64,000 nucleotides of DNA, from positions 62,001-126,000 of the IMG/VR virus record IMGVR_UViG_3300044633_003049. The stretch is one strand, 5' to 3'. A program made the translations under genes and the position numbers. Shown here piece by piece: positions 8,452 through 35,432 of the stretch. The notes under the pieces are model-generated. The model saw only the letters and a list, made by a program, of their open reading frames with translations, had not been told where the DNA came from and made no database searches. Position 1 is the first letter of the stretch. Each line of letters opens with the position of its first letter.

Positions 8452-9063
8452 TTACTTATTAAATGATACAATTGAGTATCTTGGAAATTGTGCATACTCC
8501 TCAACTGAACTAACAAAGTGAGGTGATCTAAAAACTTTATTATTTAGTAATGTAACCCTATTGAATTTAGGTAGAACTTGTTTATTAAATTCAAAATCTT
8601 TATCATCAACAACGTTTAGTATTCCTCCCCAATCCCACATCCATTTTTCATTTACATAGTATATTAAATTAATGTGTCCACCATAATCATCAATGTGTGT
8701 TCTGAAGTAATCTCCTTTATCTGATTTGTGACATCTAATGTCAAATTCATTCAATTCAAATGGTGATACTTCCTTTAACATCGGTACAAAAAATTCATTG
8801 TACGTATTTTTAATATCTTCGTTTTGTTCTAATGTAACGGACCTACTATATCTTGTTGAGTATATTTCGTCTCCTTTAGGTAAGTAAGGTGATTCGGTTT
8901 TAAAAACGTGCTCAAAGTGATTTTCTCTTACTTGATGTTTAAGTTCCCATGTTTGTTCATTTACGAATAAATCATGTATTTTTTTTGCAACATCGGTCGG
9001 TAAAAAATTGTCAATTACTGTGTAACCAATTTCCAATAAATCGCTTTTGTTTTTAGTGTACAT
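8452..9063 (-). CDS. 2OG-Fe(II) oxygenase (prolyl-4-hydroxylase-like fold)
   Basis: IDNFLP, HxD (THIDD), WGGIL, PKFNR, distal His (PHFVS), 2OG-binding R (RYSIVSF). Confidence 0.85.
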   Translation of the reverse strand: MYTKNKSDLLEIGYTVIDNFLPTDVAKKIHDLFVNEQTWELKHQVRENHFEHVFKTESPYLPKGDEIYSTRYSRSVTLEQNEDIKNTYNEFFVPMLKEVSPFELNEFDIRCHKSDKGDYFRTHIDDYGGHINLIYYVNEKWMWDWGGILNVVDDKDFEFNKQVLPKFNRVTLLNNKVFRSPHFVSSVEEYAQFPRYSIVSFNK

Positions 9064-9520: not shown

Positions 9521-10471
9521 TTATTTATTTTTTGGTATTAAGGAATCTCCCATTGTTATTATGTGTTTATATATGATTTCCGATATTACTTCATGACCTT
9601 TATATGATGGGTGTGAACATTTTGTAATATAACCATAATCACTTATTTTATCAATTGAAACAGATAATTTCCTAAAATTATCCATGCTCAATATTAAATC
9701 TAATAAATCGTCTCTCTTTTCTAAAGATAACAATAAATCAGTTACACATAAACTCCCATTTGGGTATAAAAACGTATTCCAATCTATTATATCAACTAAA
9801 CCATTAACTCTTTTTGGTTCCCTGTACATTGTGTTATCATCATGTGAAACACCTTTTATATTATCAATTAATGATTTTCTATTTATATCATTTTCAAAAC
9901 CACTTGTTAATACTAATTTAGCATTATTAACAATACACCAATTTTTTACTAATGATATATTTAACAATAATTCTATTACTGAAGATTTATCACTATGTGC
10001 ATAATTTAAATATCCACCAAAAAAATCTTTTTCTGGATTGTCATCATTAATTGAAGGCCATATTGTTTTAAAATGAACATGTTCAGCATATTCTTTATGT
10101 ACAAAATCAAACCTTTCTCTTCCACTTAACATAAAAACAACAATTTTTTCTTTTGCCATTTCTAAATTTAACTCTGGATGTAAATACAATTCATTTGCCG
10201 CCGCCCTGTTACCTCTCCCTAACATGCCAAAATTTATGGGGGTAAAATCAGTTAAATAATTTTCACAAATCTTATTAACCCATGAATTTTTATAATTGGA
10301 TTCTAAAACATCTACGTTCTCATTTAAATTCATTTTATTAATGTCCCAATCATATTTTTCCCACAAATCTATTGAGCAAGCTCCCTGCCCTTGGGTGAAA
10401 CTATCCCCTAACCCAATTAATATTTTTGAGTTTTTATCAATTTTTAAATTTTTTTCTTGCCAATAATACAT
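9521..10471 (-). CDS. SGNH/GDSL-fold protein
   Basis: IGLGDSFTQG, NFGMLGRGN, SHPSYKGH. Confidence 0.7.
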   Translation of the reverse strand: MYYWQEKNLKIDKNSKILIGLGDSFTQGQGACSIDLWEKYDWDINKMNLNENVDVLESNYKNSWVNKICENYLTDFTPINFGMLGRGNRAAANELYLHPELNLEMAKEKIVVFMLSGRERFDFVHKEYAEHVHFKTIWPSINDDNPEKDFFGGYLNYAHSDKSSVIELLLNISLVKNWCIVNNAKLVLTSGFENDINRKSLIDNIKGVSHDDNTMYREPKRVNGLVDIIDWNTFLYPNGSLCVTDLLLSLEKRDDLLDLILSMDNFRKLSVSIDKISDYGYITKCSHPSYKGHEVISEIIYKHIITMGDSLIPKNK

Positions 10472-11760
10472 TATATTAATTTTATTTTAGGTATTTTAAA
10501 AACTTCATTTGAGTATCTTTCTAACTCAAGAAATTCAATTGGTCTATTTATTAGTTTATCCATAAAAGTTCTATAATTGTGTTCTACAATTTCTTCCATA
10601 GACTTAAACCAACTTAATTTATCTTCTATGTTTATTATTTTTTTTATGGATTCTACAATTGCTTCCATTCTTTCAAAAGTCGGTAATGAGTCATAACTTT
10701 CGTCAATAAATCCATCAAACGTTCGATAACCAGTTTCTCTTAATTTTTTTAGGGTATCTTTATTACCCATTATAATAAACGGTTGTCTACACGCTATTAC
10801 TTTATATGTTTTTTCACTAATAAACATTGTATTATTACTATCACCACAATGTGCTTCACTAATAACTGTTACAAACGTATCCAAACAAATTTGATCATTA
10901 AACCTTCTTATGTAATGATTATCGTCCATTTCATCATTTCTTTTTCCATAAACTAATAATGGTAAGTTTTCAGTTAAATTTTCAACATAGTCGGGTTCTA
11001 TAGTTTTACCTTCAAAGTACCAATTACTTTTTTCAAATTTATTCATACTAACGAGACCTTTATCTAAAATACCGGCTTCAAACATATACTTATAAAACCA
11101 TATTCTATGTGGTCTTAGTCTTTTATTAAGACAAGCAAATGATTTTATGTTATCAATATTATCTGTTTTATATTTTATATGATTCTCCCACGTTGGTAAA
11201 CTTTCATTTCTATGTGGCATATGTAAAACTGTTATACCTAAATCCAACTCAAAATGTGGATATCCAATTACTTTAATCCTTTCAATGATTTCATTATCAT
11301 TCGCCCATTTTGTGTAAAATTCTTCAACCACCATATTACCAGTCACATAAACAACCTGTTTTGGTGATATTTTCCATTCTCTACATTCTTTATGAAACCA
11401 ATCCCATAACCATTCTGTTTGATATCCTTCAAAACTTTGGTCAATTAATAGGATAGCGTCTTCATTTTGTAAATCCCTTAAATATTTTTCATTAAGATGT
11501 GAGAATAGACTTTTAACATTTTCGTAATAACCAGTCCAATCCTCTGGACTATGGTTTACCCCACATGAAATTATATATTTTTTTATATCTTCATTACTAT
11601 CGTGAAAAGTATGTGTTGTGTTTATTTCATTCGATACGTAAAATAAATGACTTGCATTTAATAATGGGGACACACCAAATCTACGAATCCCAGATGGGTT
11701 TACATCTTCACAATTGGTAAAATTTAAAAAATTTTTTCCGTCTTCAAATATAAATTTCAT
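10471..11760 (-). CDS. GT10-like 'TEK' family putative glycosyltransferase
   Basis: CLNKRLRPHR; FVTVISE...FISEKTYKVIACRQPFIIMG; GYRTFDGFIDESYD. Confidence 0.6.
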   Translation of the reverse strand: MKFIFEDGKNFLNFTNCEDVNPSGIRRFGVSPLLNASHLFYVSNEINTTHTFHDSNEDIKKYIISCGVNHSPEDWTGYYENVKSLFSHLNEKYLRDLQNEDAILLIDQSFEGYQTEWLWDWFHKECREWKISPKQVVYVTGNMVVEEFYTKWANDNEIIERIKVIGYPHFELDLGITVLHMPHRNESLPTWENHIKYKTDNIDNIKSFACLNKRLRPHRIWFYKYMFEAGILDKGLVSMNKFEKSNWYFEGKTIEPDYVENLTENLPLLVYGKRNDEMDDNHYIRRFNDQICLDTFVTVISEAHCGDSNNTMFISEKTYKVIACRQPFIIMGNKDTLKKLRETGYRTFDGFIDESYDSLPTFERMEAIVESIKKIINIEDKLSWFKSMEEIVEHNYRTFMDKLINRPIEFLELERYSNEVFKIPKIKLI

Positions 11761-11787
11761 ATTACAAGTTATTCTTCAATATAAGTA

Positions 11788-12699
11788 TTATTTTTGGGAT
11801 TTAAAAGACATAATATTGAAATAATTACGAATACCTTCTTCATAGTTAATGTGTTCAAAATCTACATATTTTTTTAATAAACTAAAATCAACTCCATAAT
11901 CTCTACTGTCATTTGTAAAATTTTCAAAGTATTCAAATGATTTTATTTTTTTTATAATATTAATCAGTTCTAATTTATTTATATTCAATTCATTGACTCC
12001 AATATTTAAAATTGGTTCGTTAAATTGTATGTTTACTAAAGTGGTTATAATTTTAACACAATCAATAACATGTAAATGTGGTCTTTTAGCTAAAGGGTCG
12101 TATATTTCAATTGGTTTTTTGTCAATTACATCATTTATTATATTATTAATAAAAACGTCATTTCTCCATATTTTAGTGGCAGATGTATTATAATCAAAAT
12201 TACCGTAAAGTGTTGATAATCTTAATATTTTAAAATTTGAATTTTTATTTTCGGTAATAATTTTCTCACACTCTATTTTCATTTTTGAATAGAGTGACGT
12301 TGGTATAACCTCTGAATTTTCATTTACAATGTCTTCCGTCTTACCGTAGACACTACAACTACTAATAAAATATACCTTGGGTGTTCTATATATCCCAGAC
12401 CAATTAAATGAGTTTATGAATGTATTAAAATAACTAACTTCAGTTTCAACTTGTTTTTCTGTATCTAATTCATTTAATCTAGGTTGTGATAAATAAAATA
12501 TCATATCAAAAGATGGGTAATGAAAATCAGATCTAAGTGTTATTCCACCTACGTCTCCGTGTATTTTTTTACATTCTATTAAATCTTGTGTATTATATTT
12601 GAACTTATCAAATACGACTACATTGTGCCCTTTTTTTGTTAGTTTCTTAGATAATGGTATACCTAAATAACCTCCTCCTCCTATTAGTAAAATATTCAT
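11788..12699 (-). CDS. NAD-dependent nucleotide-sugar epimerase/dehydratase (extended SDR)
   Basis: GGGGYLG, FISSCSVYG, YxxxK (YSKMK), LRLSTLYG, RPHLHV.D. Confidence 0.9.
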   Translation of the reverse strand: MNILLIGGGGYLGIPLSKKLTKKGHNVVVFDKFKYNTQDLIECKKIHGDVGGITLRSDFHYPSFDMIFYLSQPRLNELDTEKQVETEVSYFNTFINSFNWSGIYRTPKVYFISSCSVYGKTEDIVNENSEVIPTSLYSKMKIECEKIITENKNSNFKILRLSTLYGNFDYNTSATKIWRNDVFINNIINDVIDKKPIEIYDPLAKRPHLHVIDCVKIITTLVNIQFNEPILNIGVNELNINKLELINIIKKIKSFEYFENFTNDSRDYGVDFSLLKKYVDFEHINYEEGIRNYFNIMSFKSQK

Positions 12700-12700
12700 A

Positions 12701-13711
12701 TTATTCTCTTATCATATCGGCCGTGACACAATGAAAAGACCCTCCAAGCGTTCTTGAATGTCTTAATTTACAATCCAATGCCTCAATATTGTATTTTTTT
12801 AATTCTTTAATCAGTTCAGTTTGTCTATTGTCCACAATAACTGTATTTTCATCTATTGATAACAAATTAATACCAACCCATACTGAAGCTCGTTCAACTT
12901 TATGGTAACCGATGTCCACCATTGGTGGTGACCATATTTTATCCCAAGATTTTAACATCTCAGGCATATTATTTTCATTTACTCTTTCTGGATTTAACAA
13001 ACAAAGACCCTCACGGAGTAATGCGATGGTTGAATCCAAGTGGCTATATGAATACATGTTTTCAAGGATATGTACCTTGTATTGGTCTCCTAATAGGTTT
13101 TGTAACCATTTTCCACCTAACTTGTTACCAGTATTACTAACAAGATATAAAATATCTTTATTTGACCTCAAAATATTAGCAGCATCAAACACAGGTTCTC
13201 TCTCGGTTAATGTTAATTTAGATAAATCATCTCTTTGGTAACTGTCATCATTCAAGATTGGTTTTGGTGCGGATATCCACTTTGCCCCTTCGTTCATGTA
13301 TTCAATAAATTGATTTCTAAAACAATATGTTTCATATTGTCTTGACCTTAATGTCATAGGGGCTTCCAATATTGTATTTCCAATAACTGTAACAGTATCT
13401 CTTGGACAGAAAGTGTAATATTGGTCTGTTTTCCAAAAACCATTACTTATTACATTTTCAGTATTAATAACTTCGGGTCTTCTAACTTTAATATCAAGGT
13501 CTTTTAATACTTTTACTAAATTTTCTAAATCCTCATATGTTTCTTCATACACCTTATCGTCAAAATTACCTTGTTCTATATATGGGATTCTGTCTTTATC
13601 GGCATAATTAATTGCATGTAAATCTATACCATGTTTTGGCATATTAGCGTTGTCGATTGTACCTACAAACACCTCCTTTAATTTACCCCATTCATTATTA
13701 ACTGATATCAT
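12701..13711 (-). CDS. Amidinotransferase (glycine / inosamine-phosphate amidinotransferase family)
   Basis: NEWGKLKEVFVG, CPRD, catalytic Asp (FDAAN), His (HLDST) and Cys (GGSFHCVT). Confidence 0.9.
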   Translation of the reverse strand: MISVNNEWGKLKEVFVGTIDNANMPKHGIDLHAINYADKDRIPYIEQGNFDDKVYEETYEDLENLVKVLKDLDIKVRRPEVINTENVISNGFWKTDQYYTFCPRDTVTVIGNTILEAPMTLRSRQYETYCFRNQFIEYMNEGAKWISAPKPILNDDSYQRDDLSKLTLTEREPVFDAANILRSNKDILYLVSNTGNKLGGKWLQNLLGDQYKVHILENMYSYSHLDSTIALLREGLCLLNPERVNENNMPEMLKSWDKIWSPPMVDIGYHKVERASVWVGINLLSIDENTVIVDNRQTELIKELKKYNIEALDCKLRHSRTLGGSFHCVTADMIRE

Positions 13712-14300
13712 TTTTTCTAAAAATTTCTAATTTTGTCAAATCTGGCCAATCATTAATTGTCCATTCTTTTGGTTTATTTAATATTGCTGTTGGTAATTTA
13801 GTTAAACCTTCTTCCGCAATTTCAGGTGTCATATAATAATGATATCCAACCATATCTATATTTTGTTCTTTCCACGGTATATTTGGTAATCTACCGTCAT
13901 ATGACATTTTTTTTAATTTAATAGCAGCTTCTTGATTGTCGGTTAATATCATGCCACCTCTTCCCAATGATAAATGTTTTTGATATTGAAAACTAATTGA
14001 CATGAAAGTTTTAGGAATATAACTATTTGGTTTCCATAAAACTGCGGCATCGATAACACTATATGAAAGATAATAAAAATCTTTCCAATTTTGAGTTCTC
14101 CATTCTAATCCTAAATTTAATTTTTTAGCTAAAAACGGAATTGAGATGTAAGTTTGTTTAGGAACATTAATTGATTTTACATTATTATAACGTAAACATA
14201 ATTCAATTCCATGTGTACAACTATCGACCGCAACGGCAAACGGAGATCCGAAGAACTCCGCAATTTTTTTTTCAAATTCTATTACAGTGTTAAAATCCAT
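13698..14300 (-). CDS. DegT/DnrJ/EryC1/StrS sugar aminotransferase (shortened, 200 aa)
   Basis: FEKKIAEFFG, AVAVDSCT, VIDAA, SFQYQKHLSLGRGGMI (PLP Lys), GYHYYM. Confidence 0.85.
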   Translation of the reverse strand: MDFNTVIEFEKKIAEFFGSPFAVAVDSCTHGIELCLRYNNVKSINVPKQTYISIPFLAKKLNLGLEWRTQNWKDFYYLSYSVIDAAVLWKPNSYIPKTFMSISFQYQKHLSLGRGGMILTDNQEAAIKLKKMSYDGRLPNIPWKEQNIDMVGYHYYMTPEIAEEGLTKLPTAILNKPKEWTINDWPDLTKLEIFRKNDIS

Positions 14301-15390
14301 CTTTAAGATTATCAGGAATTAATTTTGATAAAGTTCTGTAATCTAAATTTTCATGCCCAAAATAATAACCGTCTGGTTGTAGCCAATTTGGATTGAGAAA
14401 TTTATCTTTTATTTTTGTTTCCCAGTCATCATTTACAGAGACTGCCGGTTGATTTCTATAATACTCTGCAAATTCGCTCCATGTTGATTGGTCTGATTTA
14501 ATTAAAAATTTACAATAACTTAATGAAAATAAATCAACGATATTTTCAATAACATTTCCTCTAATTAAATCATTAATATTCATTTCCGAATTTAATAAAT
14601 ACTCTTTTATTATTGGGACAATATCGAATCTGGTTATAATAGAGTCACCATATTTATCTTTATAATATGAGAAAAATTCATATGGTAAATCTGTACTTAA
14701 ATAAAATTTTTGGTCTGGATTAATTTTAAGAATATTATCAATAATATTGAAGTATTTTTCATCTTCGACAAAGTCATAATATTTATTTACCTTTGGTTTT
14801 ATATTTTTCATTTTTGAAAAATCTTTTCTTATTTCAACAGGTAAATTAAAAATATCTTCCTCGGAACAATTCACTCCACTATTTCTTCTAATATGAATAC
14901 CTACAACATCATAAGTATTTCTTCTAAGTAAATCTTCAATAAATTGATCTTTCAACCTAACATATTTCAACGGCCTTTCCTTTAATGTTCTTTTATATAA
15001 TGAATGAATATGTTGATAACCAAAATCACAGTACCAATGGTCATCATCTGACAATGATTTCCCATCATCATATATTAACCTTAACTTATCTTTATCTATT
15101 TTTGACGATAATCTTACATTAAAATTTTCAACATCTAAAACCGTTAAAAAATTTAAATCTTTAACCCTTTTATCATACTCATATGAAATAAATGTTGAGG
15201 TTTCTGGTAAACTTATTAAGGTGAGTTCAGGCCAATCAGTTTTATCTAACATAATTCTGAATTCACAATCATTACGTCTATTTATATCATAGGCCACTTC
15301 CCAATGAAATATTCTATTACATAAACCAGTATCATTATTTTCCCAACCACCGTATGGTTCTGACCATCTTAATGTTCTTTTGTATATCAT
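14290..15390 (-). CDS. Fucosyltransferase-like GT-B protein (GT11/GT23/NodZ-like)
   Basis: GLCNRI, VGIHIRR, FYLSTD, DLFSLSYC..LI...STWS. Confidence 0.7.
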   Translation of the reverse strand: MIYKRTLRWSEPYGGWENNDTGLCNRIFHWEVAYDINRRNDCEFRIMLDKTDWPELTLISLPETSTFISYEYDKRVKDLNFLTVLDVENFNVRLSSKIDKDKLRLIYDDGKSLSDDDHWYCDFGYQHIHSLYKRTLKERPLKYVRLKDQFIEDLLRRNTYDVVGIHIRRNSGVNCSEEDIFNLPVEIRKDFSKMKNIKPKVNKYYDFVEDEKYFNIIDNILKINPDQKFYLSTDLPYEFFSYYKDKYGDSIITRFDIVPIIKEYLLNSEMNINDLIRGNVIENIVDLFSLSYCKFLIKSDQSTWSEFAEYYRNQPAVSVNDDWETKIKDKFLNPNWLQPDGYYFGHENLDYRTLSKLIPDNLKDGF

Positions 15391-15393
15391 ATT

Positions 15394-16158
15394 TTAAAAT
15401 TTATCTTTTAATAAATCAAACCATTTATTAGCTAAAATTTCACTATCCTCATTTGATACGTGAAATGGATTTTTGGTTTCTTTATTCTCATTATAATATG
15501 TCCATGGATTTAGTTCATCTAAATTTTTAATAACATTATCTTTACAAAAATAAAAATATTTATCATCTAATATAGGTGTTATTAAATGAAAATCAATATT
15601 ATTTGATAATAATTTATACGCACCTTCTGAAATTATCCACGTATCTTGTTGTTTTTTCCATTCCATGTCGTAAAGAAATTGAAAATAATTATTTACAATT
15701 TTTTTCATCTCTTCGTTTACAATATTCTCATATAATATATTATTAATTGAGTTACTTAACATGGTTGGGGTACTGTTGTTAAATATTATATTTTTACCGC
15801 TCTCTTCTAAACTATTTTTATATGAAATATTCGATAATCCGTTATTAGATTTAAAATAATGATTTTTCCATTTTTCAAAGTAATTATTTACTTTTAAATC
15901 ATTTAAGGGTATTTCAATTCTATCAGGACTAGTTGTACCAATAATAATATGATGGGGGTTATGTTTTATAACTTCATCAATCTGTAATCTTATACATTGA
16001 TTACTGACACCTCCCTTCGCGTATGTCATAATTTCACAACCTAACATTTCTTTAAGAATATCTGTAAAATGTTTTCCATGTCCATTTTCTAAATTATTAT
16101 CGTCTTTAGAAATTGACGCCATAAAACTATCACCACAAATACCCAATATTTTTTTCAT
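15394..16158 (-). CDS. SGNH/GDSL-fold protein
   Basis: GICGDSF, AKGGVSN, TSPDR, C-terminal FH. Confidence 0.6.
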   Translation of the reverse strand: MKKILGICGDSFMASISKDDNNLENGHGKHFTDILKEMLGCEIMTYAKGGVSNQCIRLQIDEVIKHNPHHIIIGTTSPDRIEIPLNDLKVNNYFEKWKNHYFKSNNGLSNISYKNSLEESGKNIIFNNSTPTMLSNSINNILYENIVNEEMKKIVNNYFQFLYDMEWKKQQDTWIISEGAYKLLSNNIDFHLITPILDDKYFYFCKDNVIKNLDELNPWTYYNENKETKNPFHVSNEDSEILANKWFDLLKDKF

Positions 16159-16164
16159 TATAGG

Positions 16165-17613
16165 CTACTTATTATAATTTTCTTTATCCGAAATATAAAC
16201 ACCAGGTTCAAAATGTGTTATTCTACCGTCAGTAACTTTAACATCACCAATTGTATTGTCAACCACCAATGAATTATACCAATCTTCCAACTCAGGAAAT
16301 GTTGCGACAAAATTCTTATTTCTACGAATATCATATTGAACATAAAAACTCTTAAAATCGTGATATTGCATTGACATGTCCATTTCACTTGTGTTATGAC
16401 CTCTATTAACAACTTCAATGTAATCAATTAATCTTTGAATTTGAGCCCCTTCATTCATATTAATTAATGGATTTTTTTTATGTTTTCTCCACCACATTGA
16501 TAACTTACCATGTAAATCATGTTTGACGTCATCTGGTAATGTAAGTGGTGACATAAATGCTGGCCATCTTAATATGTTAAAATCTACAATTGGTTTATGT
16601 GTTCCGTATTTTTCTTTTAATTTCAACATATCATCTAAAAATTCGGTAATACTAAATAAACACAAACTATTAATTGTCATCATAATAACAACTTGTCTAA
16701 TTTTAGCACTCTCAATTACTTTAACTAAATTACTTCTCCATAGTTCATAATTTAAACCATCTCTAATATATTCTGCTTGTGCACCATAAGCCTCACAACT
16801 TGTGTATAAATCAAACTCTTTGATGTCTAATTCGTGAGATATACTAATTAACCTATTCACAGTCATTTCATTAAGACCTAGGTTAGAATTGACTGCAAGT
16901 CGTAAATTAGGGGATGGGTATTGTTTCATTGTATCCATAAACTGCCAGAAATTACGAGATTGTGATGGTTCCCCACCAGTTACACGTATTTCCATTAATT
17001 TTTGTGATAACTCAGGCCACCATTTTAAAAAGGCATCCACATATGGATTATTCTCATTGTACTTACCATAAATCTCTGACCAAGATCCGTCAGCATAATA
17101 TGCCCCCGCACTTGTTGTTTTGAATTTCTGATATGGACCGTTATCTTTTATGTCTTTACCCCATGTTGTTGAGTATCCCGAATTACAATATGAACAAGCA
17201 AAATTACAAGTTCTATCAAATGATACCTCAATAGTTTGTGGTACAATGTCCGCATCCCAAGGTAGTTCTTTTAATGCCGCAATATCTTCTGAACTATATA
17301 TTTGACTCTTATATACTCTATCTGAAATATTATTTCTACCGATATCCTCAATTTTCCAACAATAAGAACATTCAGCCGGTTTAACACCCTCTAACATCAT
17401 TTTACGAATTTCTTTTTTGAAATCAGTATTATGTAATGCCGCAGGGTTGGTTTTAATTGCTTCAACATCTATTGGATGTGGTAATGGTAGGTGACATGAA
17501 TTTGTAAACCCATGACCTAAATGTAAACTAACATTTAACCATTTTGCCGCACAAAAACTACAACTTATCTTATTTAAATGTTCATCTCTCCAATTTGACA
17601 ATTCTTCTGACAT
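16165..17613 (-). CDS. Radical SAM enzyme with N-terminal twitch-like Cys cluster
   Basis: CAAKW..SCH...CSYCW auxiliary cluster; CNFACSYC; TGGEP. Confidence 0.9.
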   Translation of the reverse strand: MSEELSNWRDEHLNKISCSFCAAKWLNVSLHLGHGFTNSCHLPLPHPIDVEAIKTNPAALHNTDFKKEIRKMMLEGVKPAECSYCWKIEDIGRNNISDRVYKSQIYSSEDIAALKELPWDADIVPQTIEVSFDRTCNFACSYCNSGYSTTWGKDIKDNGPYQKFKTTSAGAYYADGSWSEIYGKYNENNPYVDAFLKWWPELSQKLMEIRVTGGEPSQSRNFWQFMDTMKQYPSPNLRLAVNSNLGLNEMTVNRLISISHELDIKEFDLYTSCEAYGAQAEYIRDGLNYELWRSNLVKVIESAKIRQVVIMMTINSLCLFSITEFLDDMLKLKEKYGTHKPIVDFNILRWPAFMSPLTLPDDVKHDLHGKLSMWWRKHKKNPLINMNEGAQIQRLIDYIEVVNRGHNTSEMDMSMQYHDFKSFYVQYDIRRNKNFVATFPELEDWYNSLVVDNTIGDVKVTDGRITHFEPGVYISDKENYNK

Positions 17614-17661
17614 GTTTTCTATTTTTTATAATATAATATTTTTTATTGATAATCTGAAACG

Positions 17662-18399
17662 TTATTTAATATATTCCTTAGGTACTCTTTCTAAAAAATT
17701 TGTATTTTTAGACTCATCATAAATTATACCTAAATTATTGATATTGTTAAAATTATGAAGAAAAAGAATGTCGTTATAAAATTCTTCCTCTAATATAACA
17801 TCAGTTTCACTTTGATAAATTAATTTAGAAAAATTAATATCACTATGGTTAACTATAGTTGAAAAATGATTAACATCCACTTGACAATAATATCTAGCAT
17901 TTTCAAAATCGCATTCAGGGCTGGAACATCCTAAAAATAAACCTGGATTTTTATAATCATCAATTAAGTTACCCTCAAAACTAATTCTATTATTTTCTTC
18001 AAAATTTTTATAAACTATAATTTCATTTTCTTTTTTTATGACAGTTATAATTACCCCTTTATGGATGTCCTCTTTTTTTATGTCTTTAAATGGAATAAAA
18101 TTAAAAGATTCCTCTATTTCGGTTTTATTCCAAAACTCAAATGCCATAGTATTTGTAGTTTTATTATATGATAACCCAATATTTTTACCAGGTTTACCAT
18201 ATATCATACAAATTTCATCGGTAATAAATTCTTCTGTTATTTTAAAATCACATGTAATAATGTAATTATCATTTAATAAGAATTCATCTAATATTTTATT
18301 ATTTGTTTTGTTATATTCGGTTACATATTGATTATCATGATGGGTTGACATATCCCATTGAAACTTAACCCAATAAGGTTGTTTATAATTTATTATCAT
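17662..18399 (-). CDS. Stand-alone LamG/concanavalin-like domain protein
   Basis: Beta-rich; GKPGKNIGLSY..FEFW and LFLGC..P motifs shared with the two N-terminal repeats of 18383-21184. Confidence 0.55.
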   Translation of the reverse strand: MIINYKQPYWVKFQWDMSTHHDNQYVTEYNKTNNKILDEFLLNDNYIITCDFKITEEFITDEICMIYGKPGKNIGLSYNKTTNTMAFEFWNKTEIEESFNFIPFKDIKKEDIHKGVIITVIKKENEIIVYKNFEENNRISFEGNLIDDYKNPGLFLGCSSPECDFENARYYCQVDVNHFSTIVNHSDINFSKLIYQSETDVILEEEFYNDILFLHNFNNINNLGIIYDESKNTNFLERVPKEYIK

Positions 18400-21184
18400 T
18401 TCTTATTTGCTTTATAAAATTAATTAATTCGGGATAATACTCCTCACAATTTACTCCTCTTCTTTTTTCATATTCATCAATGAATTTAATAAAATCTCTT
18501 TTACTACTATCAAATTCTTTAATGTCAGTATCGTAATCTGTAATGAAGATGTCTTTTATTCTTGAAATTTTTTCAATCTCTTGGGTTGAAAATCCGACGT
18601 CTTCAATAGTTTGTTGTTCATAGAAATTAATACTTCTATATGTTGAATTAAATTTCATGTACTTTAACCACCTATTAAAGTACTCAACATCAATATAATC
18701 TTTCAATACTCTAAAACTCATAAATGAAGGATGTCTCAAATATGATGTATCTAAAATAACTGCCGAGTTCCAATATCTTGATGTATTGAAATGTTTAAGT
18801 TTAAAACTATGTATTTTTTTAATTAGTTTTTCGTATGAAAATATACTAAACATATTAAAAGTTGACATTACTACAATGGTTACTTTGTCCAATACCGTTA
18901 AAATTTTATCTATGTTTGAGAATAGTCTATCAAACTCCAATCCAAATCTTGTGTATTCGGCTTGTTTACCGTATCCTTCACATGATGTAAACAATATTAC
19001 CTCCTTAACTCTACCTTCAGCAATTATTTTTTCTAATTTTAAAATTAATTTATCAATCAACTCATCTGATACACCTAAATTGCTATTGATTGATAATTTT
19101 AAATTTTCGTTAGGTGTGTCAGTTTCCAATATGAAATCTAATACTTTCCATGTGTCTTTTGATAATAGAGGTTCTCCACCGGTAATTCTAAAAGTATCTA
19201 AAGTTGAATATAATTCAGGGAACCATTCCCAAAACGCTTCCACATATGGATTTTCATCTGTTTGTTTATATGGTTTAGTATTTCTTTCCTCCATCCTTCT
19301 GAGACCATTAAATTCATGTGTATCTAACATATATCCTCCGTGTTCGTTAATCTCTTCCATCCATTTGGTCGAATATTCAGGTCCACAATACGCACATTTA
19401 AAATTACATGTGTTAGAAAAATTAACTTCAACATATTTTGGGTTGTAGTTATCTCTCCAATGTAAGTTGGCAATTTCGTCAAAGTGAGGTTCAGACCATG
19501 GTTCCGCAGATTTAAAAAATCTATCAGAAAATGAATCGGAATGATCTTCTACATTCCAACAATAATTACATTCACTTGGTCTTTTGTTTTCCAACATTTC
19601 TTTCCTAGCTCTCTTCTTTACATTACTATTGTGTAATGCGGTTGGGTTTCTTTTAATTTCATCTAACCCTATTTTATGTGGTTCAGGATGGTGACAACTA
19701 TGTGTTGTTCCATTATGTAAATGCATAGTCACTTGTGTCCATTTAGCCAAACAAAAACCACAACCAACTTTATTTAATTTTTCTTTAACAAGATTAAAAT
19801 CTACCATTGTCTTAAATGTTAATAAATCAACAAGTTCGATTGATGTTTCTTTATTTAAATTGTCAAAAATTTCATCAATATTATCAGTTTTTTTAAAATT
19901 AAAATAAGTTAAAGAATTATCTGTTTTTGTTAGTTTTTCTAAATCAACAATATTCATAATTCCATCATAAATACTAAAATGATTTAATTCCATTTCAGTA
20001 AAACATTTATGATTTTCTAATAAAGAACTTGGATTATGGCAACCGAAATAAATTGATTCCGTATTGTATTCAGATATTAAATTATCTTTAACTTCAATTG
20101 TGTCAATTAATTTAAAATTATGATACAATTCGAAATATTCATTCTTTTTATAAATTAAACTAATAGTAATTCCATTATGTAAATCGTTACGATTTATTTT
20201 ATAGTTTTTGTGGCAATGAAATTCTTTATTTTCTTCATCTTTTTGTGTCCAATATTCAAAAACAAACTTCTCGACTTCATAATCAAAGCTAATACCAAAG
20301 TTTTTACCTGGTATTCCAAAAAATCCAATTTTCTCATCTTGAGTAAAATGACGTTCTATTTTAAAAATAATATTTAATGAAAAATCTCTATTTGTTAATA
20401 AATTAGATTCTAAATTGGTTTTTAATTTAAATGGTTTTTTATGTTCAATTTTTAATCCAGGTACCCTTTTTCTTTTTAATTTTATTCTATCCGCAACACT
20501 GACATTTAATTCACTAAATGAAATGTTTATTAGTTTATCTTTTTGATTTTGTATTAGAAAATAATTATAGTCTTCTTTATGAACTAAATATTTTTCCTTT
20601 AAATCAAAGTAACATAACAAATTATCATTAAGATTTTTACTATTATAAAATTTTTCAACATCTTCTATATTCGCCTCTCCATTAAAAATACTAAAATGTT
20701 TTAAATCTAATTCTGTAAAACATTTGTGTTTGTGATTATCAGCATCGGGGTTATGACAACCAAAATAAAGTGGTTGGGTATAGTAATCTTCAATTAAAGG
20801 GTCGTCTAATTCTACATCGAAAAATATATTAAAGTCATGATATAATTCTAATATATTTTTTTCTTTATCGTAATGTATAGTTAAAACAAGACCATTTTCA
20901 ACATCAATTCTATTAATATGGAAATCTTTATGGCAGTGAAAATTATCTCTACCGTTCAACCCTTTTGTCCAAAATTCAAATACAAAAGTCTCAACTTCAA
21001 AATCATAACTAATTCCAAAGTTTTTACCTGGCATACCTAAAAATCCTAATTTTTCATTATCGTAAAAATTTTCAACTTTAAATTCAATTGTTAAATAGGA
21101 ACTATCAGATAAAAACGGATTTATCTTATTACTATCAAGATTATTAATTTCAAATAACCAAGGTTTTTGATTTTCTACTTTCAT
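18383..21184 (-). CDS. Two LamG-like domains fused to a twitch-type radical SAM enzyme
   Basis: Duplicated G.PGKNFGIS.D.EVE.FVFE.WT / YFGCHNP repeats; CLAKW..SCH, CNYCW, CNFKCAYC, TGGEP; paralog of 16165-17613. Confidence 0.85.
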   Translation of the reverse strand: MKVENQKPWLFEINNLDSNKINPFLSDSSYLTIEFKVENFYDNEKLGFLGMPGKNFGISYDFEVETFVFEFWTKGLNGRDNFHCHKDFHINRIDVENGLVLTIHYDKEKNILELYHDFNIFFDVELDDPLIEDYYTQPLYFGCHNPDADNHKHKCFTELDLKHFSIFNGEANIEDVEKFYNSKNLNDNLLCYFDLKEKYLVHKEDYNYFLIQNQKDKLINISFSELNVSVADRIKLKRKRVPGLKIEHKKPFKLKTNLESNLLTNRDFSLNIIFKIERHFTQDEKIGFFGIPGKNFGISFDYEVEKFVFEYWTQKDEENKEFHCHKNYKINRNDLHNGITISLIYKKNEYFELYHNFKLIDTIEVKDNLISEYNTESIYFGCHNPSSLLENHKCFTEMELNHFSIYDGIMNIVDLEKLTKTDNSLTYFNFKKTDNIDEIFDNLNKETSIELVDLLTFKTMVDFNLVKEKLNKVGCGFCLAKWTQVTMHLHNGTTHSCHHPEPHKIGLDEIKRNPTALHNSNVKKRARKEMLENKRPSECNYCWNVEDHSDSFSDRFFKSAEPWSEPHFDEIANLHWRDNYNPKYVEVNFSNTCNFKCAYCGPEYSTKWMEEINEHGGYMLDTHEFNGLRRMEERNTKPYKQTDENPYVEAFWEWFPELYSTLDTFRITGGEPLLSKDTWKVLDFILETDTPNENLKLSINSNLGVSDELIDKLILKLEKIIAEGRVKEVILFTSCEGYGKQAEYTRFGLEFDRLFSNIDKILTVLDKVTIVVMSTFNMFSIFSYEKLIKKIHSFKLKHFNTSRYWNSAVILDTSYLRHPSFMSFRVLKDYIDVEYFNRWLKYMKFNSTYRSINFYEQQTIEDVGFSTQEIEKISRIKDIFITDYDTDIKEFDSSKRDFIKFIDEYEKRRGVNCEEYYPELINFIKQIRNDNKL

Positions 21185-22599
21185 TTCATTGTAACATTTA
21201 TAAATTTAGTATTTTCATATAAAGATACATCAATATTTTCAACATTCAAAACATTTAATATATTGTTTAATCCATCTTCATTATGTTTAATTAAACCCTG
21301 TTGCATCTCCATAACAAATCTTTTTTCGTTTCTAGCGGTAGTTTCCCCCTTAGCCCATTTTCCTTTAACATAACCCTCATCTATATGGGGTATACAGTCA
21401 AAATTACCTTCCTTTCTGAATGGAATCACATTTTCAACCACATTAATATTTTCTTTTGAAATGTTAACATTAAATTCACATTCTTCTTTATTAATATTTT
21501 CTACAACTCCCTTTTTAAAATCCATTTGTAATAACAATCCATCTGAATCATGTAACGCTTCATTGATATCATTTATTGATTTATTAAAAATTCTAATTTC
21601 CGCAATTTTACCTTTAAAAAATGTATTAACGTGTGAACAAAATCCAATTATAAATGGTTGTAGATTATTATATGGTTTTAATTTTTTCTCAATTTTAAAT
21701 GGTGTGTTTTGTTTAGTTCCGTTTTGATTATTAATTAATTCATCGTTTATATATAATGACATCTCCTTTCTTTTACTATTATATGACATTGTCACCCATG
21801 TCCATTGATTTTCATATCTTTTTGCATAGTTGTAATAGTGATTACTATCTTTATCATACATAACCATATTAACTGAACGTGAATTATTAAACGATAATCC
21901 CCAAGTCCAAGAATCTAATTTTCTTATTAATGGGTACTCAATGAATTTCTTTTCTTCGTCCCCAACAAGCCAAATCGGTACCTTTTCTGGTTGTTGTTCA
22001 GCATTAAATAATATTGATATTGTATGGTCATTATCCAAACAACTATCTAATTCTTTATTAGACGGTATAATTATAAAGTTATTTATTCCATTAAAAGTTG
22101 CCGTTGTTTTATTTTTATAAGTTTTAAAAACATTATTCGTTGTATATCCTTCTAAATAACATCTCCAAAATAAGTCATCATCTTCCTGACCCCAATCCCA
22201 ATATTCATTTGAATATCCATTGGTTTTATATGCTTGTTCTTTTGTGAATAAAACGACACCTCCAAAGTATTGATCATAACCTAACCCGTAATTATATTTT
22301 GATAACTTTGTTGCAATGTGTGTTGGATGTTCTTCAGGATACGAATAATCAGCATCTACTTGTGGTAACATATCAACATCGTGCCATGCAACATAGTCAC
22401 ATCCGTCTTCAAACGCGTAATGTGCTGCAATATTTTTCATTGCACCTCTATTGAATAACTTTTCGTCTACTTGGTGACCAACATAAAACGTATGGTCAAT
22501 TCCATTATCTGTTAAATGTTTTGATAGATGTGGTATTAATTTATCAATGTGTTCTTTTCTATCTCTATATGGTATACAAATACCTAATTTATGACTCAT
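21181..22599 (-). CDS. GT7 beta-1,4-galactosyltransferase-like enzyme with inserted LamG domain
   Basis: IPYRDR, FNRGAMKN, WHDVD, YFGGV, GYSNEYWDWGQEDDD; LamG (WTWVTMSY, LYIND, FKGKIAEIRIFN); GT7 C-terminus DGLNN...INVTM. Confidence 0.85.
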   Translation of the reverse strand: MSHKLGICIPYRDRKEHIDKLIPHLSKHLTDNGIDHTFYVGHQVDEKLFNRGAMKNIAAHYAFEDGCDYVAWHDVDMLPQVDADYSYPEEHPTHIATKLSKYNYGLGYDQYFGGVVLFTKEQAYKTNGYSNEYWDWGQEDDDLFWRCYLEGYTTNNVFKTYKNKTTATFNGINNFIIIPSNKELDSCLDNDHTISILFNAEQQPEKVPIWLVGDEEKKFIEYPLIRKLDSWTWGLSFNNSRSVNMVMYDKDSNHYYNYAKRYENQWTWVTMSYNSKRKEMSLYINDELINNQNGTKQNTPFKIEKKLKPYNNLQPFIIGFCSHVNTFFKGKIAEIRIFNKSINDINEALHDSDGLLLQMDFKKGVVENINKEECEFNVNISKENINVVENVIPFRKEGNFDCIPHIDEGYVKGKWAKGETTARNEKRFVMEMQQGLIKHNEDGLNNILNVLNVENIDVSLYENTKFINVTMK

Positions 22600-30999: not shown

Positions 31000-31469
31000 T
31001 ATACGTATCTTGTTAAAATTGGTGACGTTATTGCGTTAGCATTTGGAGCAAATAATGTTATATTAACTAAACATGTGGCATTTCCCCACGATACGTTATA
31101 TTGATTTGTAAATCTTAACCAACTTTTACTACCATCACTTGGGTCTTGGTAATATGAGAATGTTATTAGTTGGTCGTTAGTTGGTCCTGATGTAATTTGT
31201 AAACCATATTGTGATAATGCAAACCAAACATTTTGAGTACCGTTATAACTTTGATATGATAAAAAACTAATATAACCTGTTACCCATTGCCAATTACTAT
31301 TATTACAAAGAACATCTGTATATGGTGTGGCGGTATAATATGGTGATATTACAGAAACATTTCCACCCCATTGTTGTAAAGCCATTGGATTAGAACAAAT
31401 TGTACTACTTGCATTTGACGTAGATGTTGCATTGTATGTTGTTGCAGTTGTACCTATTAATGTCGCCAT
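30999..31469 (-). CDS. Small beta-rich fibre-tip paralog
   Basis: MATL start; LSQYGL, WLRFTN, WGN, SPILTRYV. Confidence 0.6.
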   Translation of the reverse strand: MATLIGTTATTYNATSTSNASSTICSNPMALQQWGGNVSVISPYYTATPYTDVLCNNSNWQWVTGYISFLSYQSYNGTQNVWFALSQYGLQITSGPTNDQLITFSYYQDPSDGSKSWLRFTNQYNVSWGNATCLVNITLFAPNANAITSPILTRYV

Positions 31470-35305: not shown

Positions 35306-35326
35306 ATATATGTGTTCTAAATCCTT

Positions 35327-35361
35327 GTGATATATATCACGGTTAACGACCTATGTAGGTC
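35327..35361. promoter_or_regulatory. Three adjacent palindromes in the leader of the fibre gene
   Basis: GTGATATATATCAC (35327-35340), GTTAAC (35342-35347), GACCTA-TG-TAGGTC (35348-35361). Confidence 0.45.
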
Positions 35362-35365
35362 TTAT

Positions 35366-35373: not shown

Positions 35374-35385
35374 CATTTAATAAAT

Positions 35386-35414: not shown

Positions 35415-35432
35415 GAATGTTTTTATTTATTG

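What the first reader, a model, noticed from the sequence alone, without database searches (positions are those of the whole stretch)
11788..21184. Aminoglycoside-like chemistry in a phage: radical SAM + DegT aminotransferase + amidinotransferase + SDR
Seen: a DegT aminotransferase overlaps an amidinotransferase with an intact Asp/His/Cys triad, followed immediately by an NDP-sugar SDR; two twitch-type radical SAM enzymes lie upstream. Known: streptidine is made by oxidation, DegT-family transamination and StrB1 amidino transfer; BtrN is a twitch radical SAM aminocyclitol dehydrogenase in the same pathway as the DegT-family BtrR. Inference: a keto to amino to guanidino sugar or cyclitol route, giving a cationic guanidino-sugar for glycans, or possibly a small molecule or DNA modification.
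Basis: partly seen in the sequence, partly recalled or inferred. Interest (0 to 1): 0.82.

Follow-up and report, generated by a model that had tools for sequence, protein, structure and literature searches.

The report
Phage sugar cassette with amidinotransferase
A large freshwater phage carries a mobile five-gene block that probably turns an amino sugar into a positively charged guanidino sugar and adds it to a glycan; this sugar-tailoring step has not been shown biochemically anywhere, and it is not an aminoglycoside pathway.

Summary
On the minus strand, a 200-aa DegT-type aminotransferase (13698-14300) overlaps by 14 nt a 336-aa amidinotransferase (12701-13711). The amidinotransferase matches StrB1 over its full length (E 3e-96) with the Asp/His/Cys triad aligned. 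An NDP-sugar SDR follows it, and two N_Twi radical SAM genes lie upstream.

Three corrections:
- The DegT is a conserved "mini" form, found in more than 600 viral stretches. It usually sits next to GDP-mannose 4,6-dehydratase and has no amidinotransferase nearby.
- Near-identical phages lack exactly 11765-16168. The unit is therefore a 4.4-kb cassette of five genes: SGNH protein, fucosyltransferase-like GT, mini-DegT, amidinotransferase and SDR. The radical SAM genes belong to the conserved backbone outside it.
- There is no cyclitol-forming enzyme, no kinase and no BtrN-like fold.

The setting is the glycosyltransferase-rich "host recognition" island beside collagen-like tail-fibre genes. It encodes no membrane proteins.

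Best reading (inferred): a 4-keto NDP-sugar, probably GDP-linked, is aminated, then amidinated from arginine, then transferred to a glycan. The target may be virion proteins or the host envelope. The keto-forming enzyme and the acceptor are unidentified.

The parts
11765..16168 (-). Five-gene insertion/deletion cassette. This is the functional unit.
   Evidence: DNA colinearity with L184, L186 and L188 runs from window 25591 to 16169 and then jumps directly to 11764 or 11577. In the GT7-flanked lineage the mini-DegT and amidinotransferase are both present or both absent.
15394..16158 (-). SGNH/GDSL-motif protein, 254 aa. First gene of the cassette. Possibly a glycan O-acyl esterase or transferase.
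   Evidence: N-terminal GDS motif 'GICGDSF'. No Pfam hit, so the assignment rests on the motif only.
14290..15390 (-). Fucosyltransferase-superfamily-like GT-B glycosyltransferase, 366 aa. It is the cassette's transferase.
   Evidence: ESM Atlas neighbours carry NodZ, FUT8 or O-FucT domains, score 0.95. Invariant motifs are DTGLxNR, H166-x-R168-R169 within the 'GIHIRRG' stretch, and S302 in 'STW'. Profile-profile match to a Pfam-GT11 phage family is 89% but covers motif I only. PDB profile hit to a plant fucosyltransferase is E 0.34, not significant.
13698..14300 (-). Mini-DegT, a 200-aa PLP sugar aminotransferase. It lacks about 35 N-terminal residues, about 40 internal residues and the whole C-terminal domain.
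   Evidence: Pfam PF01041. K108 aligns with the Schiff-base lysine of GDP-perosamine synthase. D84, T50, Y51 and K108 are invariant in 34 homologues. AlphaFold pLDDT is 93.5. Foldseek top hits are GDP-perosamine synthase, ArnB and AtmS13.
12701..13711 (-). StrB1-type L-arginine amidinotransferase, 336 aa.
   Evidence: PDB 1bwd E 3.1e-96, with only two one-residue gaps. Triad D176/H224/C328 plus R104-D105 and D226 are invariant. It sits in a phage-only clade with 100/100 support.
11788..12699 (-). Extended SDR of the NDP-sugar epimerase/oxidoreductase type, 303 aa. Last gene of the cassette.
   Evidence: Pfam Epimerase 1.3e-22. It has GGGGYLG, 'SSCSVYG' and YSKMK but no dehydratase Glu. Orthologues follow the amidinotransferase in L006 and L175, where they are fused to a GT10-like domain, and in L010.
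16165..17613 (-). N_Twi radical SAM protein, 482 aa. Conserved backbone, outside the cassette.
   Evidence: NF033640 8e-89. CX3CX2C at C136/C140/C143 plus invariant N-terminal C21/C40/C82/C85. AlphaFold pLDDT 91. No specific PDB relative.
17662..18399 (-). Stand-alone copy (245 aa) of the roughly 190-aa domain that is repeated at the N-terminus of the 933-aa radical SAM protein.
   Evidence: BLASTP 29-33% identity, E 1e-20 to 1e-23. No significant Pfam hit.
18383..21184 (-). 933-aa fusion of two N-terminal repeats of that domain with an N_Twi radical SAM domain. Backbone.
   Evidence: NF033640 3.9e-91 at residues 477-923. The repeats are 46% identical. Homologues carry one repeat (L006) or none (L010).
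21181..24047 (-). Two beta-1,4-galactosyltransferase-like (GT7) glycosyltransferases, each fused to a LamG domain. Backbone.
   Evidence: Pfam Glyco_transf_7N, Glyco_transf_7C and Laminin_G_3.
10471..11760 (-). GT10-like protein from a virus-only family (429 aa), directly downstream of the cassette. Paralogues lie at 3875-5164 and, more weakly, 6451-7716.
   Evidence: hhalign against a Pfam-GT10-positive phage family gives 79.6%, E 1.5e-5, over 172 columns. The Atlas places it in virus-only clusters. Present near 60 of 79 viral amidinotransferases.
2739..3878 (-). UDP-glucose/GDP-mannose dehydrogenase-like enzyme. Part of the wider island.
   Evidence: Pfam PF00984 and PF03721. PDB UDP-glucose dehydrogenase and GDP-mannose dehydrogenase hits. 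Conserved in sister loci.
8452..9063 (-). Prolyl-4-hydroxylase-type 2OG-Fe(II) oxygenase. Part of the wider island.
   Evidence: Pfam PF13661 and PF13640. Oxygenases of this type sit directly upstream of the amidinotransferase in S-SCSM2R and L090.
31469..49916 (-). Four collagen-like tail-fibre genes, upstream on the same strand.
   Evidence: PHROGs tail fibre and collagen-like minor tail hits, E 1e-29 to 1e-68.

Best explanation
Window 11765-16168 is a mobile five-gene glycan-tailoring cassette. It sits in the phage's glycosyltransferase-rich 'host recognition' island.

Proposed steps:
1. The mini-DegT transaminates a 4-keto NDP-sugar. The most likely substrate is GDP-4-keto-6-deoxymannose, giving GDP-perosamine.
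2. The StrB1-type amidinotransferase moves the amidino group of L-arginine, through its Cys328 thiouronium intermediate, onto that ring amine. This gives a 4-guanidino sugar and releases ornithine.
3. The SDR adjusts the sugar's stereochemistry or redox state.
4. The fucosyltransferase-like GT installs the sugar on a glycan built by the neighbouring GT7-LamG and GT10-like enzymes.
5. The SGNH protein adds or removes an O-acyl group.

The likeliest acceptor is a phage structural protein such as the tail fibres or LamG proteins. The host envelope is the main alternative.

Shown: enzyme families, catalytic residues, cassette boundaries and co-occurrence. Inferred: substrate identity, order of steps and acceptor.
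For: - The amidinotransferase is StrB1-like with an intact active site. StrB1 amidinates a ring-bound amine, unlike the glycine or lysine acceptors of AGAT-type enzymes (established knowledge).
- Cassette boundaries come from natural presence/absence variants.
- The mini-DegT lies upstream of the amidinotransferase in 33 of 79 viral loci and downstream in 2. These include lineages whose amidinotransferases are only 43-47% identical to this one.
- Orthologous amidinotransferases (74-82% identical) are paired with different mini-DegT subtypes (36-54% identical). This implies repeated re-pairing.
- The window's mini-DegT is 62-72% identical to forms that sit directly upstream of GDP-mannose 4,6-dehydratase in 68 of 79 loci. 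Those loci also carry hexapeptide acyltransferases and GT10/GT11 fucosyltransferases.
- In Flavobacterium phage immuto, a PglB-like acetyltransferase follows the mini-DegT where the amidinotransferase sits here.
- The best structural matches of the mini-DegT are GDP-perosamine synthase and ArnB.
- The cassette's GT and the flanking GTs resemble the fucosyltransferase superfamily, which uses GDP-sugars.
- No island protein has a transmembrane segment, and no flippase, polymerase or initiating transferase was recognised among them.
- The island is contiguous with tail-fibre genes on the same strand.
Against: - No enzyme that makes the 4-keto substrate was found. The SDR lacks the dehydratase Glu, and no GMD is in the 64-kb window.
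- 44 of 79 viral amidinotransferase loci have no mini-DegT within 10 kb. Their neighbours are Asp/Asn-hydroxylase-like and P4H-like oxygenases, radical SAM enzymes and carbamoyltransferases. The amine acceptor therefore need not come from a DegT.
- Bacterial StrB1-type homologues sit in unrelated contexts, for example asparagine synthase, an AMP-binding enzyme and an ArgRS in a Vibrio. StrB1-likeness alone does not fix the substrate class.
- A 200-aa DegT without its C-terminal domain has never been shown to be active.
- GT assignments for 14290-15390 and 10471-11760 rest on weak or moderate remote homology.
- I found no natural guanidino sugar in a glycan in the literature held.
Confidence: 0.45

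Rival explanations
1. The chemistry is the same, but the glycan decorates the host cell envelope (LPS O-chain or capsule) during infection. The purpose would be to block superinfection by competing phages, as proposed for pelagimyophage host-recognition clusters.
For: - Published interpretation of glycosyltransferase, UDP-glucose dehydrogenase and radical SAM genes in these islands (PMC7029224).
- The cassette is presence/absence variable between near-identical phages. That fits an accessory, arms-race function.
Against: - The island encodes no membrane protein, flippase, polymerase or undecaprenyl-phosphate transferase.
- Several enzymes are fused to LamG or other putative binding domains. 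This suits soluble macromolecular targets.
- The island is contiguous with tail-fibre genes.
Confidence: 0.2
2. The amidinotransferase does not act on a sugar. It amidinates another amine, such as a lysine or hydroxylysine side chain of collagen-like fibre proteins, a polyamine or a free amino acid. Its position next to the mini-DegT reflects a shared toolbox island rather than a shared pathway.
For: - More than half of viral amidinotransferase loci lack a mini-DegT. They pair the enzyme with protein-hydroxylase-type oxygenases and radical SAM enzymes.
- In S-SCSM2R and L090 a P4H-like oxygenase is directly upstream.
- A second amidinotransferase and a prolyl hydroxylase were detected in the S-SCSM2R virion proteome (PMC12801897).
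- HsvA-type relatives use polyamines (established knowledge).
Against: - The gene overlaps the mini-DegT by 14 nt, is gained and lost with it, and was re-paired with different mini-DegT subtypes.
- StrB1-type architecture rather than AGAT- or HsvA-type.
- The cassette carries its own glycosyltransferase and SDR.
- No amidinotransferase of this family is known to act on proteins.
Confidence: 0.2
3. This is the first reader's strongest version, also proposed for phage S-SCSM2R. The genes make a diffusible aminoglycoside- or aminocyclitol-like antibiotic, with the radical SAM enzymes acting as BtrN-like dehydrogenases.
For: - StrB1 is the closest characterised relative.
- DegT, amidinotransferase and radical SAM genes co-occur, and the S-SCSM2R authors labelled that trio 'antibiotic synthesis genes'.
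- A carbamoyltransferase and a halogenase-like gene occur in some related islands.
Against: - No cyclitol synthase, inositol dehydrogenase, kinase, phosphatase, exporter or resistance gene.
- The radical SAM genes lie outside the cassette and are not BtrN-like in fold.
- The island is dominated by glycosyltransferases fused to binding domains and lies in the tail-fibre region.
Confidence: 0.05
4. The cassette hypermodifies phage DNA with a cationic sugar or a guanidino group to evade restriction.
For: - Phage glycosyltransferases can glycosylate DNA (established knowledge).
- In L011 the amidinotransferase sits beside methyltransferase-like and nuclease genes.
Against: - No hydroxymethylase, DNA glycosyltransferase family or base-modifying enzyme in the island.
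- The GT7, GT10-like and fucosyltransferase-like families are not known DNA glycosyltransferases.
- The cassette is dispensable in near-identical phages.
Confidence: 0.03

Closest known systems
StrB1, L-arginine:inosamine-phosphate amidinotransferase of Streptomyces griseus (PDB 1BWD)
   Same: Full-length homology (325 bits) with almost gapless alignment, the same Asp/His/Cys triad and the same short architecture without the AGAT insertions.
   Different: About half the residues differ. The phage enzymes form their own clade. The context holds no streptidine or cyclitol genes. The acceptor is unknown and probably an NDP-amino sugar, not inosamine phosphate.
GDP-perosamine pathway (GMD, then Per/RfbE aminotransferase, then PerB N-acetyltransferase) and the ArnB Ara4N pathway
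   Same: The mini-DegT's best sequence and structure matches are GDP-perosamine synthase and ArnB. Close mini-DegT homologues sit beside GMD and hexapeptide acyltransferases.
   Different: The aminotransferase is about half the normal size. The window has no GMD. An amidinotransferase replaces the N-acyltransferase as the amine-tailoring step.
Host recognition cluster of pelagimyophages and cyanomyophages (PMC7029224)
   Same: A hypervariable island next to tail fibres, carrying glycosyltransferases, UDP-glucose dehydrogenase and radical SAM gene cassettes that are gained and lost gradually. This matches what is seen here.
   Different: That work did not describe amidinotransferases or the mini-DegT. 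The host here is unknown (lake water), and the phage is a more distant jumbo-type myovirus.
'Antibiotic synthesis genes' of Synechococcus phage S-SCSM2R (PMC12801897)
   Same: A short DegT (195 aa, 48% identical), a radical SAM gene and an 'inosamine amidinotransferase' (42% identical) lie within 3.7 kb among glycosyltransferases and 2OG oxygenases.
   Different: There the genes are not adjacent, and the amidinotransferase belongs to a different branch. The authors left the function open. The context found here argues for glycan tailoring rather than an antibiotic.
Campylobacter phage CP220/CPt10 radical SAM and amidinotransferase module (PMC2853527)
   Same: An amidinotransferase embedded among several radical SAM genes and two nucleotide-sugar transferase-like genes in a T4-like phage.
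   Different: Only 27% identical, on a very long branch. No DegT is present, and the radical SAM genes are unrelated by BLAST.
BtrN, the twitch radical SAM 2-deoxy-scyllo-inosamine dehydrogenase
   Same: A radical SAM core plus one fully Cys-ligated auxiliary cluster site.
   Different: The auxiliary Cys motif is N-terminal here. BtrN is not among the top 50 structural matches. The genes are outside the amidinotransferase cassette.
Autonomous virion glycosylation in giant viruses and mycobacteriophages; glycosylated collagen-like BclA of Bacillus anthracis (from my own knowledge, not tested here)
   Same: Virus-encoded nucleotide-sugar tailoring, including DegT-type 4-aminotransferases, plus soluble GTs that decorate fibre or collagen-like structural proteins.
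   Different: No amidinotransferase is known in those systems. Virion glycosylation has not been demonstrated for this phage.

Membership tests
Amidinotransferase family (AGAT/StrB1 type) | Full-length sequence homology to a characterised member | tested here: met
   1bwd StrB1 at E 3.1e-96 over residues 1-335. SxtG, HsvA and AGAT at 1e-59 to 1e-51.
Amidinotransferase family (AGAT/StrB1 type) | Catalytic Cys-His-Asp triad and the Asp residues that bind the guanidino group | tested here: met
   C328, H224 and D176, plus D105 and D226, align with the StrB1 residues. They are invariant in six phage homologues down to 30% identity.
StrB1 subtype (inosamine-phosphate amidinotransferase) | Short architecture lacking the AGAT-type insertions | tested here: met
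   Only two one-residue gaps against StrB1. Alignments to SxtG and AGAT need about 14 extra residues.
StrB1 subtype (inosamine-phosphate amidinotransferase) | Acts on scyllo-inosamine-4-phosphate within a streptidine/aminocyclitol gene cluster | tested here: not met
   No cyclitol synthase, inositol dehydrogenase, kinase or phosphatase among the island proteins. Enzyme activity itself cannot be tested with these tools.
DegT/DnrJ/EryC1 sugar aminotransferases | PLP Schiff-base lysine, the Asp that binds the pyridine nitrogen, and the aromatic stacking residue | tested here: met
   K108, D84 and T50-Y51 are invariant in 34 sequences. K108 aligns with the active-site Lys of GDP-perosamine synthase.
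DegT/DnrJ/EryC1 sugar aminotransferases | Two-domain fold-type I architecture of about 360-400 aa | tested here: not met
   200 aa. The Foldseek alignment covers only about 215-230 columns of 365-aa targets, with TM normalised by target of 0.32-0.41. The C-terminal domain is absent.
Extended SDR NDP-sugar 4,6-dehydratase (GMD/RmlB) | Ser/Thr-Tyr-Lys triad plus the Glu/Asp acid-base next to the Ser/Thr | tested here: not met
   The triad is present (SSCSVYG, YSKMK), but the position of the dehydratase Glu is Ser. BLASTP against a phage GMD gives E 2.5. It fits the epimerase/oxidoreductase type instead.
N_Twi radical SAM (NF033640) | Score above the curated cutoff, a CX3CX2C motif and an additional Cys cluster | tested here: met
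   298 and 306 bits against a cutoff of 170. C136/C140/C143 and C21/C40/C82/C85 are invariant in 50 sequences.
BtrN-like aminocyclitol dehydrogenase | Specific sequence or structural similarity to BtrN | tested here: not met
   No PDB sequence hit. Foldseek top hits are SuiB, AprD4, anSME and EpeE at TM 0.34 or less, and BtrN is absent from the top 50.
Same functional unit as the amidinotransferase (for the radical SAM genes) | Gained and lost together with the amidinotransferase | tested here: not met
   L184, L186 and L188 keep both radical SAM genes but lack 11765-16168. 79 of 80 radical SAM loci have the pair, and only 7 have an amidinotransferase-like gene.
Fucosyltransferase superfamily (GT11/23/37/65-like) for 14290-15390 | Conserved motifs (GxGN-type motif I, HxRRxD-type nucleotide-binding motif, C-terminal S-T-F/W motif) and significant profile similarity | tested here: inconclusive
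   The motifs are present and invariant. Atlas feature score is 0.95 to NodZ, FUT8 and O-FucT clusters. hhalign gives 89% over 26 columns only. The PDB profile hit is E 0.34.
Phage host-recognition-cluster glyco-island | Hypervariable region next to tail-fibre genes with GTs, nucleotide-sugar enzymes and radical SAM cassettes that vary between close relatives | tested here: met
   Description in PMC7029224.

The most novel reading that the evidence does not exclude
The cassette makes a new class of nucleotide sugar, an NDP-4-guanidino-deoxyhexose such as GDP-N4-amidino-perosamine. A StrB1-type enzyme acts directly on an NDP-amino sugar supplied by a half-size DegT. The phage then installs this permanently cationic sugar on its own collagen-like tail fibres or LamG proteins to tune adsorption. 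Presence or absence of the cassette would act as a host-range or competition switch in lake phage populations.
Probability: 0.3. Interest if true: 0.8.

Novelty: new variant of a known kind. Interest (0 to 1): 0.6.

Why it matters
Amino-sugar tailoring in glycans is known to use acylation, formylation, methylation and acetamidino formation. I found no report of direct N-amidination of a sugar destined for a glycan.

If the cassette works as proposed, several things would follow:
- A new reaction type would join nucleotide-sugar biochemistry.
- Amidinotransferase genes have been noted without explanation in Campylobacter phages since 2010 and in a cyanophage in 2025. They occur in at least 299 IMG/VR loci and about 4,300 metagenomic proteins. 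These would gain an explanation.
- The idea of 'phage antibiotic genes' would be replaced by glycan diversification in the host-recognition island.

The natural cassette-plus and cassette-minus phage pairs make the question directly testable. The mini-DegT is of interest on its own as a minimal fold-type I PLP enzyme.

Tried and rejected
- Recoded or interrupted genes: none were needed. All cassette genes are intact ORFs.
- tRNA genes: none in the window.
- Nucleotide similarity to cultured phages: none.
- Sigma-70 promoter and terminator scans of 7000-26999: no enrichment.
- The T4 late-promoter motif TATAAATA: not enriched overall and not in sense orientation upstream of the island genes.
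- PHROGs and NCBIfam gave nothing for 15394-16158, 17662-18399, 10471-11760, 9521-10471 or 3875-5164.
- PDB sequence searches for 14290-15390, 3875-5164 and the radical SAM protein gave nothing significant.
- Literature searches for NF033640 and for 'guanidino sugar' found nothing relevant. The 7-deazaguanine paper mentions 'amidinotransferase' only in a reference to ArcS.
- Neighbours of the 80 bacterial and archaeal homologues share nothing with the phage cassette. The exceptions are phage-like contigs L086-L088 and L090.
- I considered that the 200-aa DegT was a gene fragment or a frameshift. I rejected this because more than 600 homologues have the same length, the catalytic residues are invariant, and the AlphaFold model is compact with pLDDT 93.5.
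- I considered the SDR as the 4,6-dehydratase. I rejected this on the missing Glu and the lack of similarity to phage GMD.
- Sequences from annotated GenBank records (L001, L174) could not be passed to structure prediction, so they were left out of that alignment.

Full report
**What is there.** The window is low in G+C (23-40%). It is tightly packed with genes, almost all on the minus strand, and has no tRNA genes. Four large collagen-like tail-fibre genes lie at 31469-49916. Identical IMG/VR viral contigs reach 212 kb. Distant protein matches are to jumbo myoviruses, Pelagibacter phage Mosig and Flavobacterium phage immuto. Together these show that it is a large phage. Exact copies of the region occur in many lake and freshwater metagenomes from several studies between 2020 and 2025.

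**The observation.**
- 12701-13711 encodes a 336-aa protein that matches StrB1 (PDB 1bwd) at E 3.1e-96 over its whole length, with two one-residue gaps. SxtG, HsvA and AGAT score about 120 bits lower.
- D176, H224 and C328 align with the StrB1 triad. With R104-D105 and D226, they are invariant in phage homologues down to 30% identity. Pfam and NCBIfam miss this protein.
- 13698-14300 is a DegT-family protein (Pfam 58.9 bits). Its stop overlaps the amidinotransferase start by 14 nt.
- 11788-12699 is an extended SDR that begins one base after the amidinotransferase stop.
- 16165-17613 and the C-terminal half of 18383-21184 match NCBIfam N_Twi_rSAM far above its cutoff.

**The aminotransferase is a conserved miniature.**
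- It is 200 aa long. It lacks about 35 N-terminal residues, about 40 internal residues and the whole C-terminal domain of normal DegT enzymes.
- It is not a fragment. More than 600 stretches in IMG/VR encode relatives of the same length.
- The Schiff-base lysine (K108), the pyridine-binding Asp (D84) and T50-Y51 are invariant.
- AlphaFold models it at pLDDT 93.5.
- Foldseek returns sugar aminotransferases only, led by GDP-perosamine synthase, ArnB and AtmS13.
- In the 79 closest viral loci (62-72% identity), none has an amidinotransferase within 8 kb.
- Instead, 68 have a GDP-mannose 4,6-dehydratase directly downstream (Pfam 5e-117). A hexapeptide acyltransferase or a methyltransferase lies upstream, and GT10/GT11 fucosyltransferases are nearby.
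- In Flavobacterium phage immuto the mini-DegT is followed by a PglB-like acetyltransferase, an SDR and GTs.
- The usual job of this family is therefore to make a 4-amino-6-deoxy GDP-sugar that is then N-acylated. That is an inference from context.

**The unit is a five-gene cassette, and the radical SAM genes are outside it.**
- DNA alignment with three close relatives was decisive. One is L184, from a 211-kb contig whose radical SAM protein is 96% identical.
- The alignment is colinear from window 25591 to 16169 and then jumps straight to 11764 or 11577.
- The window therefore carries an extra 4.4 kb, 11765-16168. It holds an SGNH-motif protein, a fucosyltransferase-like GT, the mini-DegT, the amidinotransferase and the SDR.
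- In this GT7-flanked lineage the mini-DegT and amidinotransferase are both present (window, L006-L010, L175, L185, L187, L197) or both absent (L184, L186, L188-L190, L198, L206).
- The SDR after the amidinotransferase is orthologous across variants. In some it is fused to a GT10-like domain.
- The two radical SAM genes, the small domain protein between them and the two GT7-LamG genes are backbone.
- The radical SAM pair occurs in 79 of 80 viral loci, often in arrays of several paralogues. An amidinotransferase-like gene is nearby in only 7.

**How firm is the aminotransferase-amidinotransferase link?**
- Viewed from the amidinotransferase side, at least 299 IMG/VR loci encode one. Of the 79 best loci, 35 have a mini-DegT within 10 kb and 26 within 3 kb.
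- It lies upstream of the amidinotransferase in 33 of those 35. About ten loci have it immediately adjacent, including amidinotransferases only 43-47% identical to this one.
- Orthologous amidinotransferases (74-82% identical) are paired with different mini-DegT subtypes (36-54% identical). The pairing has therefore been re-made, which argues for function rather than inheritance alone.
- Against this, 44 of 79 loci have no mini-DegT. Their conserved neighbours are Asp/Asn-hydroxylase-like and P4H-like oxygenases, radical SAM enzymes, carbamoyltransferases and UDP-glucose dehydrogenase-like genes.
- The most constant partner is the virus-only GT10-like family, present in 60 of 79 loci.
- In L011 and L012 (66% identity) the gene sits with methyltransferases, ClpP and a nuclease.
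- The link is real but facultative.

**Phylogeny.** The window enzyme, its lineage and L011 form a phage-only clade with 100/100 support. This clade sits in an unresolved radiation of bacterial StrB1-type enzymes from many phyla. S-SCSM2R falls elsewhere, as do L090 (with L086-L088) and Campylobacter phage CP220. Bacterial homologues are 36-52% identical and have unrelated neighbours. StrB1-likeness therefore fixes the reaction but not the acceptor.

**The wider island.** From about 2015 to 26554 the window encodes:
- two GT7-LamG fusions, a weak GT2-like protein and a methyltransferase;
- the fucosyltransferase-like GT;
- three GT10-like paralogues;
- three SGNH-motif proteins;
- a P4H-like oxygenase;
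- a UDP-glucose/GDP-mannose dehydrogenase-like enzyme;
- a split TPP-dependent E1-like pair on the plus strand.

No island protein has a convincing transmembrane segment. This matches the 'host recognition cluster' described for pelagimyophages.

**The radical SAM proteins.** They have the CX3CX2C motif and four invariant N-terminal cysteines. The model is confident (pLDDT 91). Even so, it resembles solved structures only through the generic core, and BtrN is not among the top 50 hits. One distant homologue sits with PqqD, YcaO and TfuA, and another sits after an SDR, so their substrate class is open. The 933-aa protein carries two N-terminal repeats of a roughly 190-aa domain. The same domain stands alone at 17662-18399.

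**Mechanism proposed.**
1. A 4-keto NDP-sugar is transaminated by the mini-DegT. GDP-4-keto-6-deoxymannose is favoured for two reasons: the mini-DegT is 62-72% identical to GMD-linked forms, and the nearby GTs are fucosyltransferase-like.
2. The amidinotransferase converts the ring amine to a guanidine, using arginine as donor.
3. The SDR (epimerase/oxidoreductase type, without the dehydratase Glu) adjusts the sugar.
4. The cassette's GT transfers it.

The enzyme families, residues and cassette boundaries are shown. The substrate, the order of steps and the acceptor are inferred. The source of the keto sugar is unknown, because no GMD lies in the window.

**Comparison with the literature.** The S-SCSM2R paper lists the same trio as 'antibiotic synthesis genes' of unclear purpose. 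The CP220/CPt10 paper noted an unexplained module of radical SAM genes with an amidinotransferase. Neither paper gives a mechanism. I found no report of a natural guanidino sugar in a glycan.

**Verdict.** This is a new variant of phage glycan-tailoring cassettes, not an aminoglycoside pathway.

Noticed in passing
window 13698-14300; loci L095-L173: A family of half-size (about 195-230 aa) DegT aminotransferases is very common in uncultivated phages, with more than 600 stretches in IMG/VR. It sits directly upstream of GDP-mannose 4,6-dehydratase in 68 of the 79 closest loci. The AlphaFold model is compact (pLDDT 93.5) although the C-terminal domain is missing.
   Followed up: yes
loci L199-L263 (e.g. 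L213, L204, L225): N_Twi radical SAM genes come as a conserved ordered pair, an 18383-type followed by a 16165-type. In many viral contigs they form arrays of up to about nine paralogues. Their function is unknown.
   Followed up: partly
window 18383-21184 (residues 1-470) and 17662-18399: A roughly 190-aa domain with no Pfam match occurs twice at the N-terminus of the large radical SAM protein and once as a separate gene. Homologues of the fusion carry one copy or none. It may be a substrate-binding module.
   Followed up: partly
window 5258-5890 and 5905-6450 (+ strand): A split TPP-dependent E1 alpha/beta-like pair lies on the opposite strand inside the sugar island. It resembles the two-carbon branch-forming enzymes of some deoxysugar pathways.
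   Followed up: no
window 35366, 37381, 39100, 43582, 51687, 52588, 63673 (+ strand): TATAAATA on the plus strand, which reads TATTTATA in the sense of the minus-strand genes, falls in seven short intergenic spacers just upstream of structural-region genes. The motif is not enriched overall.
   Followed up: no
window 26569-28230, 28237-28944, 28950-29813: Three neighbouring proteins share a similar N-terminal 45-90 residues. Two of them carry LamG domains. They look like interchangeable fibre or baseplate-attached receptor-binding proteins.
   Followed up: no
L293 5780-6793 and 10001-11047: One viral contig carries two amidinotransferase paralogues about 3 kb apart. S-SCSM2R also has two, according to its paper.
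   Followed up: no
L178 7561-9553: A distant N_Twi radical SAM homologue sits next to a PqqD-like gene, a 39-aa ORF, YcaO, TfuA and ThiF. This is a RiPP-like context and hints that some family members act on peptides.
   Followed up: no
L090 (MAG labelled Chloroflexota) and L086-L088 (Bdellovibrionota and Gammaproteobacteria MAGs): These 'bacterial' contigs carry phage-island genes. L090 has an amidinotransferase, mini-DegT, GT10-like gene, radical SAM genes, carbamoyltransferase and halogenase-like gene. L086 and L087 have GT10-like genes. All four amidinotransferases form a weakly supported group (91/26; L086-L088 alone 99/95). They are probably phage or prophage DNA binned into MAGs.
   Followed up: partly
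window 14714-14961: A lake metatranscriptome holds one 248-nt contig identical to part of the fucosyltransferase-like gene. This is weak evidence of transcription, because DNA carry-over is not excluded.
   Followed up: partly
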